Shown piece by piece: positions 43-36,522 of a stretch of 64,000 bases of DNA. Below the pieces are notes generated by a model. It worked only from the letters and a program-made list of their open reading frames with translations, was not told the origin of the DNA and made no database searches. The stretch covers positions 62,001 to 126,000 of IMG/VR virus record IMGVR_UViG_3300027759_006101. One strand, written 5' to 3'. Both the position numbers and the translations under genes were made by a program. Each line of letters starts with the position of its first letter. The first letter of the stretch is position 1.

Positions 43-2334
43 ATGGGCTACACCACACTTAACTTACTTTTACGAAAAGGCACAAATCTAAATGAATCTT
101 TAGCTATGTTTGTTTTACGTGGAGATGATATCACGAGATTAGGATATCCATCAAGCGAACAGAGAGATTTGCTCCTTGATCAAATTATAGAGGCTAAACC
201 AGAATTACAATATTTTCAAGATCATACAAGTGTAATCAACTTAATCAGACGTGGTGAAGGAAATTTTTACTTACCGCAAATAGAAGAATATATTTATTCA
301 GGAATTGATGAAAGCAAAGTTTTAGAAGTTCTTTTTAAATTATTGTTACATGGTACTCCACAAGATAAAGTTGCATCATTATTATCTTTACTTCCTAACA
401 AATATAGACTAGCAGTTGCAATAAAAATAGATGAGTACAAAGATTTTGAAAACTTCTCTAAAATTATGGCTTCTAAACTGTATTCAAGCATATCTGAACA
501 TGATTTCAATAGTGAAACTTCTTTTCTTGCAAAATTAAAATCTTTCAAAACTTTTCTTGAACTAATTTACAGTAAAGGAGACGAATGTACTCCGCTTTTC
601 ATACAAATGGGGCTTGCAAAACCTGAAGTTATAATTAGATATTTAGAAAAAAATCCAGAAGACTTTGAAAAATTTTCTGAGGATATTTTAGATAGTCTTG
701 GTGCTGAAGTTAAAAATAAAGTTGTTAAAAATGGTGTTCAAGCAAAAACAAGAATACAAAATGATGGTTTTGCTGCTTTAGAAAAAGCACAATCAGAAAA
801 AGTTATTGAAGTTAAAAAAGCAACTGAAACTTCCCTTAACTGGGCATATGGTAAAAATCCAAATAAAGTGACTGCTCCTAATGGTATGTCTGAAAGTGAG
901 CTCAGACAGAAACAAAAAACAGATGAAGTTTTCGATAAATTTATGATTTCTTACGAAGACCGTATGAAGCAAGAATCACCTTTTGCTGGTGTCAGTGAAG
1001 AAAACATTGAAAAATATTCTGATCAAATGGTCATTATAGAGTTTAGCACTTGGGCTCTCAAAGATTTTATGAGAAGGAATAATATTCCTAAGTTGAAATT
1101 AGGTCCAGTTGATTTCACCGAAGAAAAATGGGGAGGATTATTTGTACCAAGATTTCCAACAAAGGATAGAGGTCCTGTTCCTGCAATCATTATCAAAACA
1201 GATATATGGCAACAATTAGCATATCACAAAGCATTAGCAGAAAATATAGGTATGGATGCTCAGCATTATCTTGAAGCAACAAAAAGACACGAAGTTGCTC
1301 ACGCCTTACAATATCTTCAGTCTGGTGATTTTTCATTGCAAGATTCTGTTGAATTAAATCCAGAATTAACTCCAGAAGAAGCATATATTGCAAACCCGTC
1401 AGAACTTTATGCAAGAGTTCACGGAGATATTCCTTATCTCTCTAAAATATTTGATGCTCATATTGGTAAATTAATGTCAGATCCAAAGATATATCAAGCA
1501 GCCAAAGAACAATGGATACTTGATATTCAAGACGAAATGGTTCACTTAATGTCTGGTGGCACTAACGCCAAAAGATTACTTGAGGATATGGAAACTGGCA
1601 GATTTGGTAGTTACACAACATCTACTGGTCAAACAATAAAATTATCAGATCCTCTTGAAGCAATTAATAAAATGTTGCAACGTCAAAGGAATAGATTAGA
1701 AATGATCTTCCATGAGACATTCCAAATTCAAGGAAGAAGAGATTATAGAAGAGGTTTAATAGGTAAAAAAAATCAACTTGCTAGACAAATTGAATCTTCT
1801 CCAATTGATAGTCCTGAAAGAACAAAATTAGAAAAAGAATTAAAAGAAGTGCAATCAAAATTAGTTGAATCTGGAAAAATGTTAATCTTTGACGTAAAGG
1901 ATGTTACTGAAGGAGTGATCGAAGGATACCTAGCAGATTACTTTGGTAAAATTGCAAAGGCCGTAGCAGATGGTTTGCTCACTACTGATGTTGTAAATCC
2001 AGAAGGTGAAGACAGAGTAAAAGAAAATGCTCTCTTGCGTGAAGATGCAAAAAAACAAGAGCCTCCAACAGCTAGAGATATAAAACAGCATTCAAGATTT
2101 CAAATTGAACAATCAGAACCTATCCCTAGTGGAAGAAAACTTGATGTTATATTGCCAAGGTATAAGGGTGAAGGAATGCCACCTGGAAATTTCCCTGGTT
2201 TTGAAAACGCTGAACAAGATGACAAGCAAGTTGATATTACTATAGAAAGAGAGCAAGAAGAAACAGAAGAAAAGACTGCTAGTGTCTACAACCATAGAAT
2301 ATCAATCAAACAAAAAGTCTTCTCCAAGTATTAA
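43..2334 (+). CDS. Large orphan protein with a zincin-like metallopeptidase motif
   Basis: 763-aa ORF. HEVAH (HExxH) at nt 1288-1302, followed by EEAYIANPSELYAR, the Y..xPxExxAR pattern of phage zincin-like domains. Confidence 0.55.
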   Translation: MGYTTLNLLLRKGTNLNESLAMFVLRGDDITRLGYPSSEQRDLLLDQIIEAKPELQYFQDHTSVINLIRRGEGNFYLPQIEEYIYSGIDESKVLEVLFKLLLHGTPQDKVASLLSLLPNKYRLAVAIKIDEYKDFENFSKIMASKLYSSISEHDFNSETSFLAKLKSFKTFLELIYSKGDECTPLFIQMGLAKPEVIIRYLEKNPEDFEKFSEDILDSLGAEVKNKVVKNGVQAKTRIQNDGFAALEKAQSEKVIEVKKATETSLNWAYGKNPNKVTAPNGMSESELRQKQKTDEVFDKFMISYEDRMKQESPFAGVSEENIEKYSDQMVIIEFSTWALKDFMRRNNIPKLKLGPVDFTEEKWGGLFVPRFPTKDRGPVPAIIIKTDIWQQLAYHKALAENIGMDAQHYLEATKRHEVAHALQYLQSGDFSLQDSVELNPELTPEEAYIANPSELYARVHGDIPYLSKIFDAHIGKLMSDPKIYQAAKEQWILDIQDEMVHLMSGGTNAKRLLEDMETGRFGSYTTSTGQTIKLSDPLEAINKMLQRQRNRLEMIFHETFQIQGRRDYRRGLIGKKNQLARQIESSPIDSPERTKLEKELKEVQSKLVESGKMLIFDVKDVTEGVIEGYLADYFGKIAKAVADGLLTTDVVNPEGEDRVKENALLREDAKKQEPPTARDIKQHSRFQIEQSEPIPSGRKLDVILPRYKGEGMPPGNFPGFENAEQDDKQVDITIEREQEETEEKTASVYNHRISIKQKVFSKY

Positions 2335-2868
2335 CTTCATTTCTTCAAGAGCTTTTGAAAGTCTTTTAGAAAAAGCACCTTGAGTAATCCCTAAAGTTTG
2401 TGCGCATTCTTTTTGGTCTAACCCATCAAAGAAATAGACTTGGATTACTTCTCTATTTTTTTCGCTCAATTGTTCTAAAGCTTGATGTATACAAATTGCA
2501 TTGTCAATTTTATTGAAAGGATCTTGAGCTTCTTCTGGGAAGTAATCATCATTAGATAATTCTTCTTTTGGAAAATATTTATCAGTTGAGTATCTAAATA
2601 AATTGATGTCTATTCTTGTCGATAAGAAATAAGAAAAATAAGATAATTTAGGATCGTATTGTTCAATTAATTTTCTTAAAACAAAAATACAGTCACTTAA
2701 TATATCTTCTCTATGTAATGAAAGGCGAGATTCTTTTTGAATTATTCTTTTTACAGATGAAATAAAAAGTGGCTTATAAAATTCATATAATTCAAAAAGC
2801 GCAGAATCATTTCCAGCTTTGTACTTATATAAAAGCTTATTTATTTCATCGTAATTATTCTCGGCCAT
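2302..2868 (-). CDS. RNA polymerase sigma-70 family factor (ECF-size, regions 2 and 4)
   Basis: Region-2-like YKAGNDSALFELYEFYKP...EQYDPKLSYFSYF. Region-4 HTH ALEQLSEKNREVIQVYFFDGLDQKECAQTLGITQGAFSKRLSKA. Confidence 0.85.
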   Translation of the reverse strand: MAENNYDEINKLLYKYKAGNDSALFELYEFYKPLFISSVKRIIQKESRLSLHREDILSDCIFVLRKLIEQYDPKLSYFSYFLSTRIDINLFRYSTDKYFPKEELSNDDYFPEEAQDPFNKIDNAICIHQALEQLSEKNREVIQVYFFDGLDQKECAQTLGITQGAFSKRLSKALEEMKLILGEDFLFD

Positions 2869-2875
2869 ACAAGAA

Positions 2876-3877
2876 TTATACAGAGGCGAGTTTTGAAATT
2901 AATATTGGCACTGAATGATTGGCAGATCCACTGGTTCTTAAATCAACAATACTGTCAACAAGTAAAGTTATCATTTTTGAATACTGCTCAGAGCTATACA
3001 TATTTTCTTTGCTTGATTGTATGCGAATTCTTATAGGATTTTGAACTTTTACTACAAATGTAGGTTCCTTGTATTCATCATTTAAATACTTACCTAATAT
3101 GTCACGTAACTCAACAATTTCTTGAACTTCTGATAAAGGATGAAATTTTTTATTAGTTTCTGAAATAATAAGCATGAAATTCAGTTGGCTTAATAAAACA
3201 AGTAAGAATCCTTGTTCTCCCATAGAGTCAATAAGAAGATCTATTTTTGTTAAGCAATAATCTAAATTCTTATTCATCAGTTGTTCGATAAATTCGAATA
3301 TGTCGCATTCTTCATTGAAAGAGGCGTTTTGTATGTCACGTAAAAAAATCTTATCTGTGTAGGAAATTATTTTTTCTAATTCCTTAAAAAGAATATCAAT
3401 ATCATAGCAGATAATTTCTTTCTTGCTTCCAGATTGTTTTGATTTTATGCGTAAGACAGGGCATATTTCTAAAAGGTGATTTAAAGTTTCGCCGTTTATA
3501 TTTGCATTGTTTTTCAAAACATAATTATTTATATGACGTTTGAGAGCGTTAGTATCTCCCGCAAGAGGATAGCTACAATCGAAAATCAAGTTATTCTTTT
3601 TGGCTTTAGCTATAAGAGACAATCTTCCATCAAAGCTGTCGTCATCATATAAAATGACGTGTTTTATCCCTAGCTTTTCACTCTTTTCTTGAATAAGTTT
3701 TATGTCTTCATTTGTAATTTTTGTATGGACATATAAATTATCACTATCAAAAAATTTAGAATAGTTATTTATTATTTTATCTACATCATTGTCAAACAGA
3801 AGAACAAGATCAGGGAATTCTTCTCTAATCTTGTTCAGCGATATGGTAGTTGATCCGTAATAAATTCGTGGAAACAT
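2876..3877 (-). CDS. holA: DNA polymerase III delta subunit-like (clamp loader)
   Basis: ELEKIISY and DIFEFIEQLMNKN motifs, about 330 aa, directly after dnaN. Start moved to the ATG at 3877 (MFPRIYYG). Confidence 0.65.
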   Translation of the reverse strand: MFPRIYYGSTTISLNKIREEFPDLVLLFDNDVDKIINNYSKFFDSDNLYVHTKITNEDIKLIQEKSEKLGIKHVILYDDDSFDGRLSLIAKAKKNNLIFDCSYPLAGDTNALKRHINNYVLKNNANINGETLNHLLEICPVLRIKSKQSGSKKEIICYDIDILFKELEKIISYTDKIFLRDIQNASFNEECDIFEFIEQLMNKNLDYCLTKIDLLIDSMGEQGFLLVLLSQLNFMLIISETNKKFHPLSEVQEIVELRDILGKYLNDEYKEPTFVVKVQNPIRIRIQSSKENMYSSEQYSKMITLLVDSIVDLRTSGSANHSVPILISKLASV

Positions 3878-3878
3878 T

Positions 3879-4976
3879 TTAGTCCATTGGAAAAAGGATA
3901 TGCTTGAAATTTTCAGCTTCAAGCATTAACAAAATAAAATCATTATGTTTAATAAAATTGAGTCTTAACTTTTTACCATCTAACAATTCTAAAACTCTGA
4001 TTAGATGAGAAGACACATATGATACGGATAAAACTTCATAATTTTCAACTTCTATGGTATCAACGACAGCATTTTTTTCATTACTTGTTGCTGAAACTAT
4101 AAGCTTATTGATGTCTAAGGTCAAGTTTATCATATGAGAATTGGCAATACTTGATACGAACTTGACACTCTTAACTAATGCATCTTTTTCCAAATCCAGA
4201 GATAAAAAGAAACTATCACTAAAAAACTGATTGAAATTAGAAAATATTTTTTCGTAATTATTCTTCTCAAGACTACAAGAAAGTTCTCCGCCATCCCAAG
4301 TTAAATAAAGTTTATTATTAAAGAGTGAAAAAACGACTCCTGGTATTTTGTCAATATAGTAAAGAATTACATCTGAGATAGTTTTAGAAATCAAGTAAGA
4401 TGACTGCAATTCGTACTTTTTACCAAATACACTTATTCTATGTTTATCAGAAGATTGAGTGTTAATTTTACCATCTTCAAAAAACCAAAGTATAGAAGTA
4501 TAAGGATGTTCATCAAAATCAGGAGCGCATGAAAAAGAAGTCATTTTAATGCTGTGAACAAAATCTTCTACTGTAATTTCCAAAGTTTCTTCATTATTTG
4601 AAAAACTAATTACAAAATTATCTACAGGAACAGTTGCTAAAGATACTCTGGTTTTCTTGTTACCAAATATAAGCAAATTGTCTTCAGGATTGTAAATAAA
4701 TTGAACTTCTTCTGTTGGAAAGTTACTAAGTGCATTAAAAAATGAAGAGATGTCCAATCCAAAAGTACCATTTTCTGTAGATTGAACATTCTTAAGTAAA
4801 AATTTTGAACTGCAGAAATTATTCTCTGACTGGACATAAAGTTTTCCATCAATTGCGTGAAAAATAAGACTACTTGACGCAGCTTTATTCTCACGCATTG
4901 AAAGCTTTGATTTTTCAACTTTATTCAGTAATGCAAAACATACAAGATGCTGTGCCTTATTCAACTTAAATTTCAA
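3879..4976 (-). CDS. dnaN: DNA polymerase III beta sliding clamp
   Basis: About 365 aa with three-domain beta-clamp pattern and SSDKHRIS (=TDGHRLA). TTG start at 4976 overlaps the purA stop (TTGA). Confidence 0.75.
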   Translation of the reverse strand: MKFKLNKAQHLVCFALLNKVEKSKLSMRENKAASSSLIFHAIDGKLYVQSENNFCSSKFLLKNVQSTENGTFGLDISSFFNALSNFPTEEVQFIYNPEDNLLIFGNKKTRVSLATVPVDNFVISFSNNEETLEITVEDFVHSIKMTSFSCAPDFDEHPYTSILWFFEDGKINTQSSDKHRISVFGKKYELQSSYLISKTISDVILYYIDKIPGVVFSLFNNKLYLTWDGGELSCSLEKNNYEKIFSNFNQFFSDSFFLSLDLEKDALVKSVKFVSSIANSHMINLTLDINKLIVSATSNEKNAVVDTIEVENYEVLSVSYVSSHLIRVLELLDGKKLRLNFIKHNDFILLMLEAENFKHILFPMD

Positions 4977-24459: not shown

Positions 24460-26250
24460 TTATGCTGATTTTATATCTTCTATTATCATCACCAGATTAT
24501 TATTACCAGACCAGTTATCAAGTTCAAGGGTGTAAACTACGTCAACTTTATCGCCTGGTTTGAATTCGTTACAAATATATCCACGTCTCCAAGCATTAGC
24601 AGAAACCCAAGTCTTTTCACCATTTGACAACTTAAGCTTAGCGTGTTTGCCTTGTGTAAGAGATTTAGCTTCAACAAGAGTCATATTCTTAGTGATGAAT
24701 ATTGGATTATGGTTTCCACTTCCAAAAGGAGATATTTTCGATAGATGAACATATGTTTTTATATTCAAATCACTAAAAGGCATACGAGCATCAATATCAA
24801 TAATTTTCTCACTACTTGGTTCACCTAATTTATCTTGAGCATAATTATTTAATGCTTTTCTCATTGCTGGAATATTGTCTATCGGAAGTTCAAAACCAGC
24901 AGCAAAAGCATGACCTCCACAAACAGTACTACCATCTGCTCTTTTCTTAAATAATTTCCAAGCTTCTTCTGACTTAAGAGCATCCAAGATATTAAAATCT
25001 CGAGTAGAACGACAAGAGCCTTTAGCATATCCATCTTTTTTAAATGAACAAACCAGAGTAGGCTTATTGTACATTTCTGCAATTTTGCCAGCAATAAGAC
25101 CAATCAATCCTGGGTGCCAATCTTCTTCACCCAAAATCAATATATGCTCTTTCTCTAAATCAAAATTTCTCTCAACAAAATCAATTGCCTGTTGAGTAGC
25201 TTTTTCTTGCTGTTCTTGGCGGCGAGTGTTAGCGTTGTTCATCTGCTTGGCTAGATTAGCTGCTGTAATGTCATCTTTTGAAAGCATCAAGCTCAAAGCA
25301 GTGCCAGCATCAGCAAGTCTACCTATGGCATTGATTCTTGGGCCAATTTGAAAGCCAATAGTCGTGGGAGTAACATCTTTTACTCCAGCTATACGAAGAA
25401 GTTCTTTGATTCCAGGTTTGTTACTGTTTGAAAGAATTGAACAGCCATAATTTACAATAACTCTGTTCTCATCAATCATTGGGGCAACGTCAGCAACAGT
25501 GCCTAATGCTGCAAATTCAATAAGTTCATCAACAAATTCATAAACATTAAGTTTACGATAACGGGCTAATCCGAGCATCAATTTAAAAGCAATTCCACAA
25601 CCAGCCAAATAATCAAATGGATAGCGCTCAAAACTATCTTTCTTATGTGACTTAAAATGCTCTCCTGGATAGAAAGGATCGTCTCTGTTAGGATTGACTA
25701 CTGCCATTGCTTCAGGCAACGATCCATCTTCACTAGGATGATGGTGATCAGTAATAATCAAGTCAAGATTTTTCTCTTTTGCATATGCCCCAGTTTCAAA
25801 AGCAACAATTCCACAGTCAACACTCATAAGAAGAGTTGCACCAGAAGCCAAAGCCTGATCGACAGAATGAATCTTGATATCGTATCCATCTTCCATCCTA
25901 TGAGGGACTTTGTATTCTATATTTGCTCCCATTTTTTCAAGAGCAGTAACAACAATAGCCGTAGAAGTAATTCCATCTACGTCATAATCTCCCCAGACAA
26001 ATATTTTCTCTCCAGAGTCAATTGCTTTACTTATGCGTTTTATAGCTATGTCAGCATCAGGCAAAGACATTGGGTTGTGAAGTTTTTTGATTTTCAAGTC
26101 AAGGAATTGCTCAGCTTTTTTCACTGAATCAATACCACGAGTCATCATAACTTGAGCAATTGACAATGGCACTTCAAGTTCACAGGCAAGTTCTTTGACT
26201 GAACTCATATCACAACTACGCATTTTCCAAACTGTTTCTATTTTATCCAT
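24460..26250 (-). CDS. recJ: Single-stranded DNA exonuclease RecJ
   Basis: GDYDVDGITS, RMEDGY, VDCG, ITDHH (DHH), GTVADV, GPRINAIGR, GSCRS, GGHAFAAG, PFGSGNHNP. Confidence 0.95.
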   Translation of the reverse strand: MDKIETVWKMRSCDMSSVKELACELEVPLSIAQVMMTRGIDSVKKAEQFLDLKIKKLHNPMSLPDADIAIKRISKAIDSGEKIFVWGDYDVDGITSTAIVVTALEKMGANIEYKVPHRMEDGYDIKIHSVDQALASGATLLMSVDCGIVAFETGAYAKEKNLDLIITDHHHPSEDGSLPEAMAVVNPNRDDPFYPGEHFKSHKKDSFERYPFDYLAGCGIAFKLMLGLARYRKLNVYEFVDELIEFAALGTVADVAPMIDENRVIVNYGCSILSNSNKPGIKELLRIAGVKDVTPTTIGFQIGPRINAIGRLADAGTALSLMLSKDDITAANLAKQMNNANTRRQEQQEKATQQAIDFVERNFDLEKEHILILGEEDWHPGLIGLIAGKIAEMYNKPTLVCSFKKDGYAKGSCRSTRDFNILDALKSEEAWKLFKKRADGSTVCGGHAFAAGFELPIDNIPAMRKALNNYAQDKLGEPSSEKIIDIDARMPFSDLNIKTYVHLSKISPFGSGNHNPIFITKNMTLVEAKSLTQGKHAKLKLSNGEKTWVSANAWRRGYICNEFKPGDKVDVVYTLELDNWSGNNNLVMIIEDIKSA

Positions 26251-27007
26251 TGTTTTTTCTTATGATTATCTTATCTCTGCCCAATTCAATAGTTTCTAAA
26301 ATTACTTCATCTAATTTTGATAATGAGTTGTTTCTAGCAAGATCGTCTGGGTCCATACCATCACACAAATAAATACTAATTACATTTATTTGAAGATTTT
26401 TTATTGTTTCAATTGCTTTCTCTGTAGCTATTCTTCCAGGGTAATCACCATCCATCAATAAACAGATATTATCGCAATACCTTGAGGCTAGTGCTACTTG
26501 ACATTCATGTAGAGATGTGCCACATATAGCAGCAACATTTTCTATGCCTTTATCATACAATGAATAGACATCAAAATATCCTTCGGTTAATATGATGTAA
26601 TTTTTTTCTCTAGCTTTGTCTTTTGCTACATCAAGAAAAAATAAATTTCTATTTTTTTGATAAGGTTCATTAATCCATTTTCCTCTTTTCCACTTATCAA
26701 TTCTATCTTGGCATTTAGCAGGTTCATTGCCAAAGCTATTCCACATTGCTTCGATAGTTATCTCTTCTAATTCTGGAATTTGTCTACCAGCTAAAGCAAT
26801 AATTTCTCCGTATACATTTTTTATAGGAACAATTAATCTACCTTTTAGATAAGGAAAACTATATCTAGAGAACGGAGGACAAAAAGCTACCAATTTGTTT
26901 TCAGTAATCTTTTCTGAAAGATGTCTAGTTTTAAAATATTCTTGAACAACTTTATTTTCATCATAGTTGCGCAAAAATTGATTGTAGTTCAATTCAAAGC
27001 TGTTCAT
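26243..27007 (-). CDS. dnaG: DnaG primase catalytic core (TOPRIM) without its zinc-binding domain
   Basis: RLIVPI...IIALAGR, TEGYFDV, AAICGTSL, LMDGDYPGRIA, GMDPDD. Start moved to the ATG at 27007. Confidence 0.85.
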   Translation of the reverse strand: MNSFELNYNQFLRNYDENKVVQEYFKTRHLSEKITENKLVAFCPPFSRYSFPYLKGRLIVPIKNVYGEIIALAGRQIPELEEITIEAMWNSFGNEPAKCQDRIDKWKRGKWINEPYQKNRNLFFLDVAKDKAREKNYIILTEGYFDVYSLYDKGIENVAAICGTSLHECQVALASRYCDNICLLMDGDYPGRIATEKAIETIKNLQINVISIYLCDGMDPDDLARNNSLSKLDEVILETIELGRDKIIIRKNNG

Positions 27008-27085
27008 CAAACAAATTGTATCATTAAAGGTAAGAATAATCATCTACAAAGAAATAAAGAATATCATTTTATTCAAGGTTTAAGA

Positions 27086-30819: not shown

Positions 30820-31596
30820 TTAAATTCTTGAATTTCTAGTCCGAACTGTAGCCTGATTCCTATTTATAGGAGTTTTATCTTTCGAAAAAAGATTGGACAT
30901 ACCCTCTTGATTGAAGGAATGATTGATTCTTGAAAGCGCTTGATGCTCTCGTAAAATTCTGTCCATTTGACTTGCTGCAAATTCAATATTTTTTAGATAA
31001 TGCTCCAAATATGTTAGCAGCCTTTTGGAGTTTGTCATCGGAATGACAAATGGGTGAACAGTGAAAGCAGCATTTGCTTCTTTATCTTTCGCTGTTCCTG
31101 ATGATAATCTGATAGCCATTTCTCTAAGATTTTTATGTGCTTGAGAAATCATTTCATAATGTGCATAAACTACAGAAATTATTTCTGTCAATCTGTTTCT
31201 ATATTGAACTTGTAATGCATATGAAGCAGAAAATGATTCAAAATCATAGTCATCTTTAGTAGGAATTGCAATATCCCATTTTCTAACTTCATTTCTAATC
31301 TCAAGTTCATCATAAATTGGCAAAAGACTAATAGCATCTTGCCAATTTTGCACTTCTTTAGCAAAACTTTCTTCGCTAATACCTTTGAGACGACTAACTA
31401 AATCTTTGGAAAAGTTAGGATCTTGCCAGGAAATACTTTCTGGCATAGGAGCCCAATCTAAATTAGCTACAAGGATAGAATTTTCTTCATCATATCCCTC
31501 TTCGCCCTCAGACTTAATGACAAAATCTTCATTGGCGTAGTCTGCATAATCATCAAAATCTAAATCTTCCATAGCATCCTCAATCGAATAATTCAT
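30820..31596 (-). CDS. Hypothetical helical protein, possible UvsY-like recombination mediator
   Basis: Long amphipathic helices with the SGTAKDKEANA motif. Position next to the ssb-like gene and recA. Confidence 0.35.
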   Translation of the reverse strand: MNYSIEDAMEDLDFDDYADYANEDFVIKSEGEEGYDEENSILVANLDWAPMPESISWQDPNFSKDLVSRLKGISEESFAKEVQNWQDAISLLPIYDELEIRNEVRKWDIAIPTKDDYDFESFSASYALQVQYRNRLTEIISVVYAHYEMISQAHKNLREMAIRLSSGTAKDKEANAAFTVHPFVIPMTNSKRLLTYLEHYLKNIEFAASQMDRILREHQALSRINHSFNQEGMSNLFSKDKTPINRNQATVRTRNSRI

Positions 31597-34500
31597 CGCT
31601 CAAAAGGTGATTGGAAACTCTTGCAGTGTTTAATTGTTTCTTTTCACCACTTACAATACTATCATAGGACATTGAGTTTTTTTCAGCAAGTTTTCTTAAT
31701 CTTAAGGCTTGTTTTTCCTCACGAGATCTATCTAAAACTAACTGGTCCCAATGTAAAAGAAAATCTTCTACATACTCAAATTCATCAGCATCAGGCAAAC
31801 AGCACAAAGCATTAGCTTCAGCTAGTGCAGCAACAGTGCCTCTATTAGGTCTTGCTCTGTAACAAAAATCTTTAATGTCTTCATAAGGCTGGCTTTCAAC
31901 AATTTCAACTGATCTTGTTCCAACTCCTTTGATAGTCGATAATGGAAGTAAAATTTCACCTTTTTTATTGACACTTGTCTCAACACCAGACTCATTAATG
32001 TTTGGGTTTTTGATAGGTATTCTTTCCATATCGCATTCTCTTCTTAAGACTGCAACTTTATCTTCATCAAGCCTATCAATTTGTATACAAGCAGCAAGCC
32101 ACTCAGAAGGGTAATAATTACGCAAATAAGCTGTGTAGTATGATAAAAGTGCATATGAGCAAGCGTGTGACCTATTGAAAGCATATCCTCCGAATTTTGC
32201 CATCAATGCAAGAACTTCATCAATCACTTCTTTAGATATTCCGTTTTCAGCACTTTTAGAAGCAAATAAACTACAAACCTCATCAAAATCCTTGCCAGAT
32301 TTTTTAGAAATAGCTTTGCGTAATTTGTCTACTTGCTGCCAAGTAAAGCCTGCCATATCACGAGCCAAAAACATTGCTTGCTCCTGATACACCATAATTC
32401 CGTATGTCACTGAAAGATGTTTTTCAATAATGGGATGAGCATATTGAATTGTTTCAGGATGCCTTTTACCTTCAGCATACTGTGGAATATAATCCATAGG
32501 ACCTGGACGATAAAGTGCTGCAACAGCAATTAAATCTTCAACACTAGAGGCATTGACATCTCGTAAAGCTTGTTGCATTCCTTTAGAAGCAAATTGAAAA
32601 ACTGAAGCTGTTTTACCTTTCGCATAAATATTCTTGAAAATCTTCTGGTCATCAAGATTTATTTTTTTGAAATCGATTTCTTTATTGTGAAGTCGTTTGA
32701 TATGTTGCAAACACAAAGAAACTTGCTGGAATGCTGCTAAGCCCAAAAAGTCATATTTTACAAGGCCTACACGTTCTACATTCTTCATATCGTATGCAGA
32801 ACACAAGTTGCCTTTTGAGTTTTCGATAGGTGCGTGATAAGAAATTGGTTCTGAAGATACAAGCACTCCAGAAGCGTGGACACCAAAGTTAGAAATAGTT
32901 CCAACTAAATGAATTGCATTATCAATTTCAGGTTTCCATTTCCTGTAGTACATCTTGAAATCTTCATTTTCAATAAGAGTATCTTCAATAGTAGAGCCTG
33001 GTTTTTTAGAAATCAATGCAGAGATATTTAGTGCCTGGTTATGAAAATCATCAGGATATTTTGCCTGAAATCTTTCGGATGATTTTAGACAACCAACAAC
33101 AGCGGCTTTTGCACCATATCTTCCCCAAGTACCAATTTGCGCAACGTGGTCATCACCAAAACGGTCTTTGGTCCAATCAATAACTTCTGAACGCCTAGAA
33201 TCGTCAATATCTGTATCAACGTCAGGAAGAGCAGCAACTTTAGAGACAATTAAACCAGACTCAGGCTTTTCATCAGTTATTCCTAATATATGAGCGGTCC
33301 AAAGTTGTGATTCATTCGTTTGGGTTTTTATGCCTAATTTAGCTAAACCATAAATATACGAAGACAAGCCTTGATTCTCTAATACCCACAATTCTTTTTC
33401 GATATCAGGTTCATACTTTTGATATTGCGGAAAATGCTCAAGCCACTTTTGAGTGTACTTCTTGAGTTTTTTAGTGTATGGAATTTGTTCTTGATCACCA
33501 TATTCAGAAAGAAATTGTGAATGTGGGAACTCAGAAATATCAATCTTGTATTGAGTGCCTCTTCCAGGATTCAAAAAACGTTCAAACATCAAGTTCCAGC
33601 GAACAGGATCTACATTGCAAACTTCAAGACAAAAGTTCACTAAAGAACCTACCCCAGAACCACGAATTCCAAAGTGAATATTCTTTTGTTTTAAGAATTC
33701 AACCATTTCTCTTTGAATTAAAAAATAGTCTGTAACACCCATATACCAAATTTGTTTAAGTTCATAATTCAAACGTTCAAGATATGTTCTATTAAATAGA
33801 CCGGCAGCTTTCAAACCATTCAAGCACAAGTAAGCAAGATACGCCTCATTATCTTTATGATAAGGAAGCTTTGAATTCTTAAATGCAGCAAATTCTGGAT
33901 TAGTGACTGGTACTTTTGCCGATGGTAATAAGTGAGGTACATCAAGCTTGAAAAAATCTTCCACCATCTCTGATATAAGTACAGAATTCTTCAAAGCTTC
34001 AGGAACTTGAGCACCAAATATTTTATGCATTTCATCATAAGACTTCAGATAAAATTGATGGCTGCCGTAAGCTTCTTTCTTACCGCCACCTTTTCTGTCA
34101 GTCCTAGAGTCACGTTGATCCCTCATTTGAATTAAGACATCGTGAATAGTCCAGTCTAATTTATCTAAATAATGAACATCATTTGAAGCGACCAATGGCA
34201 CATCAAACTTTTTAGCAACATTAAGTAAATGCTGCATATTGTGTTTTTGTTCTTCTATTCCATGATATTGAAGTTCAACAAAATATCTATTGCCAAAAAC
34301 ATTCTTGAAACGTGACGCAATTTTATTTGACTGTTCTAAATCTTCCTTGATTATAGATTGATTAAGTTCAGATGCTAAGCAGCCAGATAAAGCAATCACA
34401 CCTTCACTATGCTTTTCGATGCATCCCCAGTCTACACGAGGAGAGTAATGAAAAGCATCAGGATCATTACCAATAGCAGATAACGCTAATAAATTTTTAT

Positions 34501-34819
34501 ATCCTGTTTCATTTTGAGCAAGAAGGGTTAGGTGATTGAGTTTCTTTCGACGACCATCTTCTGTCTTGCTTTTATCAAAACGATCTTCACAAGTGTAAAC
34601 CTCAATTCCAACAATTGGTTTGATAGTTTCGTAGTCACATTTAACACGGCAAGCTTCAACAAATTCTACTGCTCCACCAAGTTTTCCGTGGTCAGTAATT
34701 GCAGTAGCTCTAAAGCCCATTTCTCGTGCTTTAAGGGCGTATTTAGCAGGAGTAGGAAGTGCGTCTTGTATTGAAAAATGTGTGTGTGCGTGAAGATGCA
34801 CAAAATCTTTATTACTCAT
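31580..34819 (-). CDS. dnaE: DNA polymerase III alpha subunit
   Basis: PHP domain (HLHAHTHFS, TDHG, SNDVHY), FERFLNP, LPDVDTD, HASGV, KYDFLGL, YQEQ, YAFNRSHA, HhH IKGVG. Start moved to MSNKDF (34819). Confidence 0.95.
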   Translation of the reverse strand: MSNKDFVHLHAHTHFSIQDALPTPAKYALKAREMGFRATAITDHGKLGGAVEFVEACRVKCDYETIKPIVGIEVYTCEDRFDKSKTEDGRRKKLNHLTLLAQNETGYKNLLALSAIGNDPDAFHYSPRVDWGCIEKHSEGVIALSGCLASELNQSIIKEDLEQSNKIASRFKNVFGNRYFVELQYHGIEEQKHNMQHLLNVAKKFDVPLVASNDVHYLDKLDWTIHDVLIQMRDQRDSRTDRKGGGKKEAYGSHQFYLKSYDEMHKIFGAQVPEALKNSVLISEMVEDFFKLDVPHLLPSAKVPVTNPEFAAFKNSKLPYHKDNEAYLAYLCLNGLKAAGLFNRTYLERLNYELKQIWYMGVTDYFLIQREMVEFLKQKNIHFGIRGSGVGSLVNFCLEVCNVDPVRWNLMFERFLNPGRGTQYKIDISEFPHSQFLSEYGDQEQIPYTKKLKKYTQKWLEHFPQYQKYEPDIEKELWVLENQGLSSYIYGLAKLGIKTQTNESQLWTAHILGITDEKPESGLIVSKVAALPDVDTDIDDSRRSEVIDWTKDRFGDDHVAQIGTWGRYGAKAAVVGCLKSSERFQAKYPDDFHNQALNISALISKKPGSTIEDTLIENEDFKMYYRKWKPEIDNAIHLVGTISNFGVHASGVLVSSEPISYHAPIENSKGNLCSAYDMKNVERVGLVKYDFLGLAAFQQVSLCLQHIKRLHNKEIDFKKINLDDQKIFKNIYAKGKTASVFQFASKGMQQALRDVNASSVEDLIAVAALYRPGPMDYIPQYAEGKRHPETIQYAHPIIEKHLSVTYGIMVYQEQAMFLARDMAGFTWQQVDKLRKAISKKSGKDFDEVCSLFASKSAENGISKEVIDEVLALMAKFGGYAFNRSHACSYALLSYYTAYLRNYYPSEWLAACIQIDRLDEDKVAVLRRECDMERIPIKNPNINESGVETSVNKKGEILLPLSTIKGVGTRSVEIVESQPYEDIKDFCYRARPNRGTVAALAEANALCCLPDADEFEYVEDFLLHWDQLVLDRSREEKQALRLRKLAEKNSMSYDSIVSGEKKQLNTARVSNHLLSDELFD

Positions 34820-34860
34820 AACAATCCATTCTATAAGCGCCGTCAAAGACAGTCATTCAC

Positions 34861-35679: not shown

Positions 35680-35890
35680 ATTTTTCTAATTCTCGATTTA
35701 TACCAGAAGTTAATATATATTTATAAATTGATTCTTCAGTTAAATCTGGGAATGCTGTTATCATTATTTGCCTTAATAGTAACATTTTTTTAGCAGCAGA
35801 ACCAGTCAAAATTAAATTGACCGCAACTTCATCAGAAATATCTTTTAGTGATTCTTTAATTTGATTAAGATTGAAATTTGGTTTTAGCAT
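35663..35890 (-). CDS. Hypothetical protein
   Basis: 75-aa ORF overlapping both neighbours. Confidence 0.5.
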   Translation of the reverse strand: MLKPNFNLNQIKESLKDISDEVAVNLILTGSAAKKMLLLRQIMITAFPDLTEESIYKYILTSGINRELEKFAEDD

Positions 35891-36522
35891 AATTTTAACT
35901 CTTTCGCTTTTTCAGATGACAAATTATTAAACTTCTTCCATTCATTACGAATTTTAGTATAATTTTTTTCAATGATTAGTTTATCCATCATTTTATAATA
36001 ATCTTCTGTCCAAGATAATATATCAGAATTAAAATTAAACTTTCTTTCAAACAGTTTTATCTTTTCAGCCATCAAAACTAAAAAATTACCTTCATCCATA
36101 CCACCAGGAAAATTATCAGAATTTTCGTTTCTTACTAAATAAGTTTTTATGGAATCTGAAAGTTCATTGACTAAAGACTTGAGCTCTAAATCAGAAGTTT
36201 CTACATCTAATTTAGCAAAGACAGAAATCTTTTGTATTGCCTCAATGAAGTTAAGATTCTCAACTTCTTGAACTAAACTTATTAAGTCACCCTTAGCATT
36301 ACATCCAAAGCAGTTGTAATTGTTGTCTTTTATGTTAACACCAAAAGATGGGCTTGAATCTTCGTGATTTGGCAAAGGGCAATTAGTATTAGCCCAGTCA
36401 CTACCATTTGAAAAGCTAAATTCACTCCCATAACAATCTTCCATAAACTCAACAATATTTGTGTTTTTGTTGAGTTTATCAATAAAAGAGCGAGTAATTT
36501 TTTCTTTCAAGACAGCATCCAA
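35884..36522 (-). CDS. Stand-alone CHC2 zinc-binding domain of primase plus helical C-terminus
   Basis: CPLPNHEDSSPSF....YNCFGC...GDLISLVQEVENLNFIEAIQKI. Confidence 0.85.
   Translation of the reverse strand: MDAVLKEKITRSFIDKLNKNTNIVEFMEDCYGSEFSFSNGSDWANTNCPLPNHEDSSPSFGVNIKDNNYNCFGCNAKGDLISLVQEVENLNFIEAIQKISVFAKLDVETSDLELKSLVNELSDSIKTYLVRNENSDNFPGGMDEGNFLVLMAEKIKLFERKFNFNSDILSWTEDYYKMMDKLIIEKNYTKIRNEWKKFNNLSSEKAKELKLC

What the first reader, a model, noticed from the sequence alone, without database searches (positions are those of the whole stretch)
33230..33556. About 105-aa insertion in DnaE just before the catalytic DxD that looks like a degenerate internal duplication
Seen: canonical DnaE has FERFLNPERxSMPDID, but here 109 codons separate NPGRG from LPDVDTD. 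The insert re-runs the preceding segment: YEPDIEKELWVLENQGLSSY vs YLERLNYELKQIWYMGVTDY, and NESQLWTAHILGITDEKP vs the canonical GSLVAYALGITDIDP. No intein motifs are present. Inference: a duplicated palm-adjacent subdomain, or a relic of re-fusion of a split dnaE, positioned to alter the active-site surroundings.
Basis: partly seen in the sequence, partly recalled or inferred. Interest (0 to 1): 0.6.

Follow-up and report, generated by a model that had tools for sequence, protein, structure and literature searches.

The report
Duplicated palm subdomain inside phage DnaE
The replicative DNA polymerase of this 358-kb phage carries an extra, well-conserved 109-residue domain just before its catalytic aspartates; the domain is a decayed second copy of the neighbouring nucleotide-binding part of the enzyme and lies where related phages have the polymerase gene cut into two genes.

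Summary
Window 33230-33556 (minus strand) is residues 431-539 of a 1088-aa DnaE (31580-34846). These 109 residues have no counterpart in solved Taq, E. coli or M. tuberculosis DnaE, where about 3 residues link the FERFLNPER helix to the PDxD strand.

Unrelated windows score 15.4 or less and column shuffles 16.8 or less. The insert folds alone with high confidence (pLDDT 91), and its best structural matches among 48,161 chains are all C-family polymerases.

At least 120 metagenomic protein clusters share the insert; no deposited phage record does. In relatives, dnaE is two genes, without inteins. The N gene has PHP, the GS-motif copy and a short tail. The C gene starts with the decayed copy, then DxD. 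The window's insert equals that tail plus that head, so it is the seam of a polymerase found both fused and split.

The first copy keeps the canonical position and the insert is an appendage. Its function, and whether fusion or fission came first, are unresolved. I rate it a new variant of a known kind, of moderate interest.

The parts
31580..34846 (-). dnaE-like gene (C-family DNA polymerase alpha), 1088 codons from the TTG. The real start is probably the ATG at 34819 (residue 10, MSNKDF), where the homologues begin.
34262..34798 (-). PHP domain (residues 17-195)
   Evidence: Pfam PF02811, E 1.4e-39
33557..33814 (-). Copy 1: the canonical N-terminal (nucleotide-binding) palm segment, residues 345-430. 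It has the invariant RGSGVGS motif and the FERFLNPGRG helix.
   Evidence: It aligns to Taq 383-458. It is the most conserved block of the protein (0.77). It superposes on solved DnaE together with the rest of the palm.
33230..33556 (-). The 109-residue insert (residues 431-539), an independently folding helical domain on a two-stranded stalk
   Evidence: (pLDDT 91, pTM 0.83)
33491..33556 (-). First part of the insert (residues 431-452). It is homologous to the C-terminal tails of the N-half proteins of split dnaE relatives (QYKIDISEFP against RYKLEFPEFP and similar).
33479..33508 (-). Loop (residues 447-456) that corresponds to the break point in split relatives: their N gene ends and their C gene starts here
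   Evidence: junction DNA
33257..33433 (-). Copy 2: the degenerate duplicate of the palm N segment (residues 472-530). It lacks the GS motif and the FERFLNPER helix. E485, W487, N511 and P528 are invariant or nearly invariant in the family.
   Evidence: hhalign E 4e-9; controls; BLASTP of the homologous heads; fold matches; conservation
33209..33229 (-). LPDVDTD (residues 540-546): the strand with the two catalytic aspartates, D542 and D544
32750..32752 (-). D699 in KYDFLGL, invariant. By my recollection of the E. coli structure it is the counterpart of the third catalytic aspartate.
   Evidence: Invariant column; the assignment rests on background knowledge.
32240..32713 (-). Finger domain (residues 712-869)
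   Evidence: PF17657, E 7e-47
31796..32020 (-). Helix-hairpin-helix domain (residues 943-1017)
   Evidence: PF14579, E 5.7e-14

Best explanation
The insert is a conserved, folded, non-catalytic domain that arose by duplication of the N-terminal (nucleotide-binding) helical subdomain of the DnaE palm.

The first copy (residues 345-430) keeps the GS motif and the canonical position against the DxD sheet, so it does the catalytic work. The second copy (about residues 472-530) has lost the GS motif and the last helix. It hangs off the chain between the FERFLNPGR helix and the DxD strand on a short two-stranded stalk.

The duplication created a seam at which this phage polymerase exists in two states. 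Relatives encode two polypeptides. The N half carries PHP, copy 1 and a short tail. The C half carries copy 2 as its head, followed by DxD, thumb, fingers and HhH. These halves are predicted to reassemble into the ordinary DnaE fold without inteins. In the window's clade the two halves are one ORF, and the insert equals tail plus head.

Shown here: the insert is real, it is conserved, it is homologous to the palm N segment, it is equivalent to the tail and head of split relatives, and copy 1 sits in the canonical place in the models.

Inferred: (a) the order of events, which I judge most likely to be a partial tandem duplication in an unsplit gene followed by repeated fission, with the window's clade ancestrally fused; (b) that the domain is kept for a structural or assembly role at the seam rather than for catalysis.
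For: Insert boundaries come from the PDB alignment. The insert is conserved in 129 clusters at 37-99% identity and has invariant residues.

AlphaFold2 of the insert alone gives pLDDT 91.2 and pTM 0.83, with five helices and paired terminal strands. Foldseek's best PDB hits are DnaE and PolC only: 7pu7_A has prob 0.98, TMq 0.50 and E 0.13. In the VIA-align wide search the top 7 of 48,161 chains are all C-family polymerases. The compact alignments cover model 20-115 against Mtb DnaE1 304-417 (Z 5.4, rmsd 3.6, 94 aligned) and E. coli 276-397 (Z 5.1).

hhalign of the insert-plus-head profile against the canonical palm N profile gives 96%, E 4e-9, score 48.1 over 59 columns. Unrelated windows score 15.4 or less, shuffles 16.8 or less, and the protein's own window 330-419 scores 35.8.

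Head-only BLASTP hits canonical DnaE just upstream of DxD, with P0148 at E 2e-11 and 17 further heads at E<=0.02. Pfam PF07733 covers C-piece P0150 residues 6-253 as profile 3-260 in one stretch. tblastn of P0141:1-260 aligns from residue 14 to unsplit Streptomyces phage DnaE in one piece.

Split genes were verified on contigs with their N partners. Their junctions have Shine-Dalgarno-like (purine-rich) stretches, by my reading of the DNA, followed by ATG. The tails align to the start of the insert.

The model of P0001 296-720 (pLDDT 91, pTM 0.82) superposes on Taq, Mtb and E. coli DnaE over 287-292 of 425 residues at rmsd 2.1-2.9, Z up to 27. That is everything but the insert.

The complex model of N half P0177 with C half P0135:1-440 scores ipSAE 0.86 against a best control of 0.00. 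That mark was reached by 51 of 78 solved complexes and 2 of 108 mismatched pairs. The runs agree in at least 78% of contacts and the partner pLDDT is at least 75. Copy 1 (residues 374-432) touches the DxD strand (81-89).

In the tree the window sits in an all-fused clade (100), sister (99) to a clade with both fused and split members.
Against: Within the close family alone, the similarity of the insert to copy 1 is no better than to unrelated windows, and BLASTP self-comparison finds nothing. The homology therefore rests on intermediates.

The fold Z-scores (4.4-5.4 for the compact alignments) are in the range the tool warns can arise by chance for helical domains, and Foldseek's E-values exceed 0.1.

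The complex pass may reflect memory of contiguous DnaE structures. It did not place the head (1-80) or the tail (433-450) in confident contacts, so an assembly role for the insert is not supported by it.

The backbone of the tree is unresolved and comes from a quick search, so the order of duplication, fission and fusion is not established. No coordinates were available to locate the insert relative to DNA or dNTP.
Confidence: 0.75

Rival explanations
1. Re-fusion relic. The ancestor of the window's clade had dnaE as two overlapping genes, for example after whole-gene duplication and complementary truncation. Loss of the stop codon fused them, leaving tail plus head as an internal insert.
For: The insert is collinear with N-tail plus C-head. 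In L007 the two ORFs are in the same frame and separated only by TAG plus one codon, so a single mutation would fuse them. Fused and split sisters occur repeatedly: P0128/P0137 and P0132/P0131/P0135, each at support 100. Split forms are spread widely over the tree. An overlap between pieces is what duplication-degeneration fission predicts.
Against: In the 36-row clade that holds the window, 34 rows are fused and the 2 split rows are nested. Parsimony there needs 1 fission against 3 fusions. The deeper branching is unresolved and only quick support values are available.
Confidence: 0.3
2. The insert is an unrelated domain captured from elsewhere, and the resemblance to the palm segment is convergent or due to chance.
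For: There is no BLASTP self-match and no Pfam family. The family-only profile match is at background level. The fold Z-scores are modest.
Against: The hhalign E of 4e-9 has clean controls. The heads form a graded series reaching BLASTP E 2e-11 against canonical DnaE at exactly the expected position. All top structural hits are C-family polymerases. A profile search of 1.84 billion proteins found the domain only in DnaE contexts or short fragments.
Confidence: 0.05
3. A remnant of an intein or intron that is removed from the protein or the RNA.
For: DnaE genes often host inteins, and some family members carry inteins elsewhere in the protein (PF14890 in P0039, P0040, P0086 and others).
Against: There are no Hint or intein hits at E<=10. 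By my reading, the sequence has no Cys or Ser at the start and no His-Asn at the end. There is no Rfam intron. The stretch is in frame and conserved as protein across more than 100 clusters, with pLDDT 91.
Confidence: 0.02

Closest known systems
Canonical DnaE (DNA polymerase III alpha; Taq 2hpi/3e0d, E. coli 2hnh/5fku, M. tuberculosis 5lew/7pu7) and the unsplit DnaE of cultured phages (Streptomyces, Rhizobium, Pseudomonas, Geobacillus and Moorella phages)
   Same: PHP, palm with GS motif and DxD, thumb, fingers and HhH are all present and superpose.
   Different: None of them has anything between NPER and PDxD. The window has a 109-residue extra domain there. The window's protein also shows no OB or tau-binding C-terminal domain in Pfam.
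Split minimal DNA polymerase III alpha of group 2.2 jumbo phages (Iyer et al. 2021, PMC7824862)
   Same: A phage C-family polymerase divided, without inteins, between the N-terminal NTP-binding subdomain and the C-terminal Mg2+- and DNA-binding subdomain. This is topologically the same seam.
   Different: That form is minimal: none of the other Pol III alpha domains, distantly located genes, and it accompanies a family B polymerase. Here the enzyme is full length, it is the only PF07733 match in the genome, it is fused in the window, and the seam carries a duplicated copy of the NTP-binding subdomain, which that paper does not describe in the passages I read.
Cyanobacterial and metagenomic split dnaE with split inteins (Wu et al. 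1998; Caspi et al. 2003; Dassa et al. 2009, PMC2677866)
   Same: dnaE is encoded as two genes whose products form one polymerase.
   Different: Those halves are joined by trans-splicing inteins. The cyanobacterial site lies far downstream of the palm by my recollection, and the sites of the metagenomic loci were not compared. The split relatives found here have no intein at the seam (sequences) and overlap by a duplicated segment.
Rossellomorea phage phiT1 DnaE (PV767480.1 gp20/gp18)
   Same: A cultured phage with dnaE annotated as two genes.
   Different: The N piece there is 573 aa, a 49-aa ORF lies between the pieces, and the break is at another place. No head domain was examined.

Membership tests
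C-family DNA polymerase, DnaE type | N-terminal PHP domain | tested here: met
   PF02811, E 1.4e-39, residues 17-195
C-family DNA polymerase, DnaE type | Pol-beta-like palm with a GS nucleotide-binding motif and the DxD catalytic strand plus a third Asp | tested here: met
   R395, G396, S397, D542, D544 and D699 are invariant. The palm aligns to Taq and superposes at Z 25-27.
C-family DNA polymerase, DnaE type | Finger and (HhH)2 domains | tested here: met
   PF17657, E 7e-47; PF14579, E 5.7e-14
C-family DNA polymerase, DnaE type | OB fold and tau-binding C-terminal domain of DnaE1 | tested here: not met
   No Pfam OB domain in P0001, and the protein ends about 70 residues after HhH. Some split relatives do have an OB domain (P0160). 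This is not required for the C family as a whole.
C-family DNA polymerase, DnaE type | Polymerase activity, clamp binding | not testable with these tools
   Needs biochemistry.
Intein | Hint-fold splicing blocks, Cys/Ser at the N end, His-Asn plus a nucleophile at the C end | tested here: not met
   No Pfam hit at E<=10. The insert begins TQYK and ends VAA followed by L.
Internal duplicate of the DnaE palm N subdomain | Significant profile similarity to the segment before DxD, in a collinear register | tested here: met
   hhalign 96%, E 4e-9, against controls of 16.8 or less; BLASTP of the heads, E down to 2e-11
Internal duplicate of the DnaE palm N subdomain | Same fold as the palm N helices | tested here: inconclusive
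   The top 7 of 48,161 chains are C-family polymerases, but Z is only 4.4-5.4 for the compact alignments and the Foldseek E is 0.13.
Split (two-gene) non-intein dnaE | N and C halves encoded as separate ORFs | tested here: not met
   The window's gene is one uninterrupted ORF. Relatives on L003, L004, L006 and L007 are split.
Split minimal Pol III alpha of group 2.2 jumbo phages (Iyer et al. 2021) | Minimal catalytic module without PHP, two distant genes, alongside a family B polymerase | tested here: not met
   PHP is present and the gene is fused. Whether a family B polymerase exists in the genome was not searched.

The most novel reading that the evidence does not exclude
The decayed second copy of the nucleotide-binding subdomain might be more than a scar. 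It could be a functional pseudo-subdomain that can occupy, or compete for, the catalytic sheet. In split phages it would act as a built-in placeholder that keeps the C half folded until the N half docks. In fused phages it would act as a switch or partner-binding platform next to the active site. That would make this lineage a natural example of an intein-free, self-assembling two-piece replicative polymerase built by overlap duplication.
Probability: 0.12. Interest if true: 0.75.

Novelty: new variant of a known kind. Interest (0 to 1): 0.55.

Why it matters
C-family polymerases are regarded as architecturally conservative, and surveys of bacterial DnaE that I read (PMC3919608, PMC12926913) do not mention an insert or duplication at this position.

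This is a large, uncultured phage lineage of at least 120 clusters, several on contigs of 200-600 kb. In it the palm carries a second, decayed copy of its nucleotide-binding half, and the same seam is found fused or split into two genes in close relatives.

It offers a natural case for three questions: how an essential enzyme can be broken into two genes without inteins, how a duplicated overlap may ease that transition, and how much extra mass the polymerase tolerates next to the catalytic aspartates. It also gives annotators a marker: C-terminal dnaE ORFs that begin with this head domain are halves of a two-gene polymerase, not truncated genes.

Tried and rejected
- BLASTP of the insert against residues 300-429 found nothing.
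- Pfam on the insert gave only noise at E>0.1.
- hhalign using only the close family scored 16.1. Unrelated windows scored 16-19, so this test gave no support.
- tblastn of the insert alone against 50,697 phage records found no match at E<=1.
- The AU test on the 68-row PMSF tree did not finish in three runs. I replaced it with a 45-row LG+G4 test. That test gave p-AU 0.118, so a single origin of insert-bearing forms is neither rejected nor shown.
- The complex model did not put the head or the tail in confident contacts. The idea that tail and head form the inter-subunit clamp is therefore left without support.
- An in-frame TAG in L007 raised the possibility of stop-codon recoding. I rejected it because TAG ends 3 of 13 genes there, and a GGAGG stretch (read by eye) followed by ATG follows the stop.
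- Intein and intron readings were rejected.
- Three full-text searches, followed by term look-ups in six of the listed papers, found no description of this duplication.
- The sequencing-read tools were not used.
Full report
**Setting.** The window is bases 62001-126000 of a 358,269-base IMG/VR virus record, about 32% G+C. The finding lies in an ORF on the minus strand, 31580-34846, which translates to P0001 (1088 aa). Homologues begin at the Met ten codons in, so the real start is probably the ATG at 34819. Pfam finds PHP, DNA_pol3_alpha in two stretches, the finger domain and HHH_6. It is the only PF07733 match in the genome. The gene sits in a replication module, all on the minus strand:
- ribonucleotide reductase
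- RecJ
- a Toprim primase core
- RecA
- DnaE
- a DnaG zinc-ribbon ORF
- DnaB
- an IstB-like ATPase (possibly a helicase loader)
- SbcCD-like genes

**The observation.** phmmer against PDB aligns P0001 355-429 to Taq DnaE 383-458 and P0001 539-1042 to Taq 460-972. Residues 431-539 lie between NPGRG (426-430) and LPDVDTD (540-546). They have no counterpart in Taq, E. coli or M. tuberculosis DnaE. These 109 codons are exactly window 33230-33556. Ten deposited DnaE sequences (nine from phage records, one Salmonella) that I extracted go from NPER (GBK1: DVTR) to PDxD in about 3 residues. The insert has no Pfam hit, intein families included, at E<=10, and the region has no Rfam hit.

**The insert is a conserved, folded domain.**
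- A word-indexed search scoring only residues 420-550 found 129 protein clusters with the insert, at 99% down to 37% identity. Nearly all are 1050-1130 aa, and several sit on contigs of 200-600 kb.
- In a 100-sequence alignment, E485, N511 and P528 are invariant. Q432, Y433, W487, L489, E490, Q492 and G522 are nearly so.
- Mean consensus frequency is 0.52 for the insert and 0.60 for its C-terminal part. The catalytic domains score 0.65-0.77 and the C-terminal tail 0.36.
- AlphaFold2 folds the insert plus 7 flanking residues on each side at pLDDT 91.2 and pTM 0.83. The model has helices at P0001 442-449, 455-471, 473-491, 495-504 and 516-520. It also has strands at 432-433 and 534-536; their position at the two ends of the insert suggests a two-stranded stalk, but I had no coordinates to confirm that they pair.
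- No deposited phage record matches the insert by tblastn at E<=1.

**Is it a duplicate of the preceding segment?** The simple tests fail. BLASTP self-comparison finds nothing. A profile built only from the close family matches the preceding segment at score 16.1, and unrelated windows reach 16-19.

The picture changes with relatives found by an exhaustive profile search of 1.84 billion proteins. Many proteins of 550-940 aa begin, at residues 2-8, with a domain matching profile positions about 36-116 of the insert. That domain is followed at once by PDxDxDF. I call this the head. The evidence that the head and the insert are copies of the palm N segment is:
- A joint profile of 31 inserts and 25 heads, compared with a profile of the canonical segment before DxD, gives hhalign probability 96%, E 4e-9 and score 48.1 over 59 columns. 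The canonical profile was built from four deposited DnaE sequences, copy 1 of the family and three N-half proteins.
- The controls are clean. Unrelated 90-residue windows of the protein score 15.4 or less. Thirty column shuffles score 16.8 or less. The protein's own window 330-419 scores 35.8, E 1.4e-6.
- Head-only BLASTP against ten canonical DnaE sequences hits the stretch just upstream of DxD. P0148 reaches E 2e-11 (33% identity over 84 residues), 17 further heads reach E<=0.02, and the window's own insert reaches E 0.015 in the right place.
- Pfam's DnaE palm profile covers P0150 residues 6-253 as profile positions 3-260 in one stretch.
- tblastn of P0141:1-260 aligns from residue 14 to unsplit Streptomyces phage DnaE in one piece.

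Fold evidence agrees but is weaker. Foldseek's only PDB hits are DnaE and PolC; the best, 7pu7_A, has probability 0.98, TMq 0.50 and E 0.13. In an exhaustive VIA-align search the top 7 of 48,161 chains are all C-family polymerases. The compact alignments cover model 20-115 against Mtb DnaE1 304-417 (Z 5.4, rmsd 3.6, 94 residues), E. coli 276-397 (Z 5.1) and Taq 292-457 (Z 4.4). The tool warns that such Z values alone are not significant for helical domains.

Compared with copy 1, copy 2 lacks the GPGRGS loop and the FERFLNPER helix.

**Link to split dnaE.** I checked the genomic context of four of these C-terminal proteins.
- On L003 and L004 (contigs of 75 and 165 kb), a 445-aa ORF with PHP plus the N part of the palm lies 3.7 kb upstream of the 834-aa C-piece. 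Six genes lie between them.
- On L006 and L007, the N gene (496 and 450 aa) directly precedes the C gene.
- On the P0131 contig, a large ORF directly precedes the C gene. It runs to the contig end and was not identified.
- The junctions read AAGAGGAAT-TAA-T-ATG (L006) and GGAGGG-TAG-AGA-ATG (L007). Each has a purine-rich, Shine-Dalgarno-like stretch (my reading of the DNA) ahead of the ATG. TAG is an ordinary stop in L007, ending 3 of 13 genes.
- L007 has the same gene neighbourhood as the window: DnaB, a DnaG zinc ribbon, DnaE, RecA and a separate Toprim gene.
- The N proteins end with the canonical copy, then NxGR, then a 15-20-residue tail that aligns with the first residues of the window's insert.

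So the window's insert equals N-tail plus C-head. The break point in the relatives falls in the loop at residues 447-456. There are no inteins at this seam. Inteins detected in some members lie elsewhere in the protein.

**Which copy does the work?** The model of P0001 296-720 (pLDDT 91.1, pTM 0.82) superposes on DnaE over 287-292 of its 425 residues. The matches are Taq 3e0d_A (Z 24.8, rmsd 2.1), Mtb 5lew (Z 27.0) and E. coli 271-576. That is essentially everything except the 109-residue insert, so copy 1 sits in the canonical place.

A complex model of the split pair P0177 plus P0135:1-440 scored ipSAE 0.86 against a best control of 0.00. That mark was reached by 51 of 78 solved complexes and 2 of 108 mismatched pairs. 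The runs agree in at least 78% of contacts and the partner pLDDT is at least 75. In it, N-half residues 374-432 (copy 1) lie against C-half residues 81-89 (the DxD strand). The head (1-80) and the tail (433-450) are not among the confident contacts. Because contiguous DnaE structures are solved, this pass shows likeness to the ordinary fold, not measured binding. It gives no support to the idea that tail and head form the clamp between subunits.

**Order of events.** I built a quick maximum-likelihood tree of the region from DxD onward, with 68 rows.
- The window falls in a clade of 31 fused sequences (support 100).
- That clade is sister (99) to a clade with fused P0117, P0126 and P0132 and split P0131 and P0135. 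Within this 36-row group, one fission is more parsimonious than three fusions.
- Elsewhere, fused and split sisters occur (P0128/P0137, support 100).
- Other split clades mix with canonical DnaE on an unresolved backbone.
- Well-supported branches force at least three changes between the fused and split states.
- An AU test does not reject holding all canonical sequences together (p 0.118). A single origin of the duplication is therefore compatible with the data but not shown.

I favour duplication in an unsplit gene followed by repeated fission (about 0.5) over a split ancestor followed by fusion (about 0.3). This remains open.

**Comparison with what is known.** Iyer et al. 2021 (PMC7824862) described a minimal Pol III alpha in group 2.2 jumbo phages that is split into NTP-binding and Mg2+/DNA-binding proteins. 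That is topologically the same seam, but the enzyme is minimal (none of the other Pol III alpha domains), its genes are distant, and it accompanies a family B polymerase. Cyanobacterial and metagenomic split dnaE genes use split inteins (PMC2677866); the cyanobacterial site lies elsewhere by my recollection, and I did not compare the metagenomic sites. Surveys of bacterial C-family polymerases (PMC3919608, PMC12926913) mention no insert or duplication at this place. I found no paper describing the duplicated head, but the library does not hold every journal.

**Verdict.** The insert is a degenerate internal duplicate of the palm's nucleotide-binding subdomain, and it marks the seam of a phage DnaE lineage that exists both fused and as two genes. 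Function is the weak point. The domain is conserved and confidently folded but lacks catalytic motifs, and I could not locate it in space. I rate it a new variant of a known kind, with interest 0.55.

Noticed in passing
window 35884-36522 (-) and 26243-27043 (-): The DnaG primase appears to be split into two genes about 9 kb apart. A 212-aa ORF has only the CHC2 zinc ribbon, and a 266-aa ORF has DNAG_N plus Toprim. The same arrangement is seen on relative L007 (1994-2602 and 11901-12788).
   Followed up: partly
window 34819-34846 (-): The ORF opens at a TTG, but homologues begin at the ATG nine codons downstream (MSNKDF). The annotated start should probably be 34819.
   Followed up: partly
window 31580-31800 (-), C-terminus of P0001: The DnaE shows no OB or tau-binding domain in Pfam (about 70 residues follow the helix-hairpin-helix match), and the last 68 residues are poorly conserved (0.36). 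Some split relatives, such as P0160, do carry an OB fold.
   Followed up: no
homologues P0039, P0040, P0086, P0088, P0110, P0116, P0117, P0150, P0170, P0171: Several members of the family (1390-1570 aa, or long C-pieces) carry intein domains (PF14890, PF14528) at other positions in the polymerase. Inteins and the intein-free seam therefore coexist in this lineage.
   Followed up: no
L007 5985-6005: The N and C dnaE ORFs are in the same reading frame and separated only by TAG plus one codon. A GGAGG stretch (read by eye) lies inside the end of the N gene. A single base change would fuse them, and read-through was not excluded.
   Followed up: partly
L008 (Rossellomorea phage phiT1, PV767480.1) 1501-4783: A cultured phage whose DnaE is annotated as two genes (573 and 469 aa) with a 49-aa ORF between them. 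The break is at a different position from the seam studied here.
   Followed up: no
P0046: An insert-bearing DnaE is recorded on a 1.36-Mb contig named as an Armatimonadetes MAG. This could be a prophage, a misbinned phage or a bacterial copy, and was not examined.
   Followed up: no
window 19124-44381 (-): This is a long co-oriented replication and nucleotide-metabolism module. It holds class I ribonucleotide reductase large and small subunits, RecJ, RecA, DnaB, an IstB-like ATPase (possibly a helicase loader), an AAA ATPase and SbcCD-like genes. No tRNA genes occur in the whole window.
   Followed up: partly
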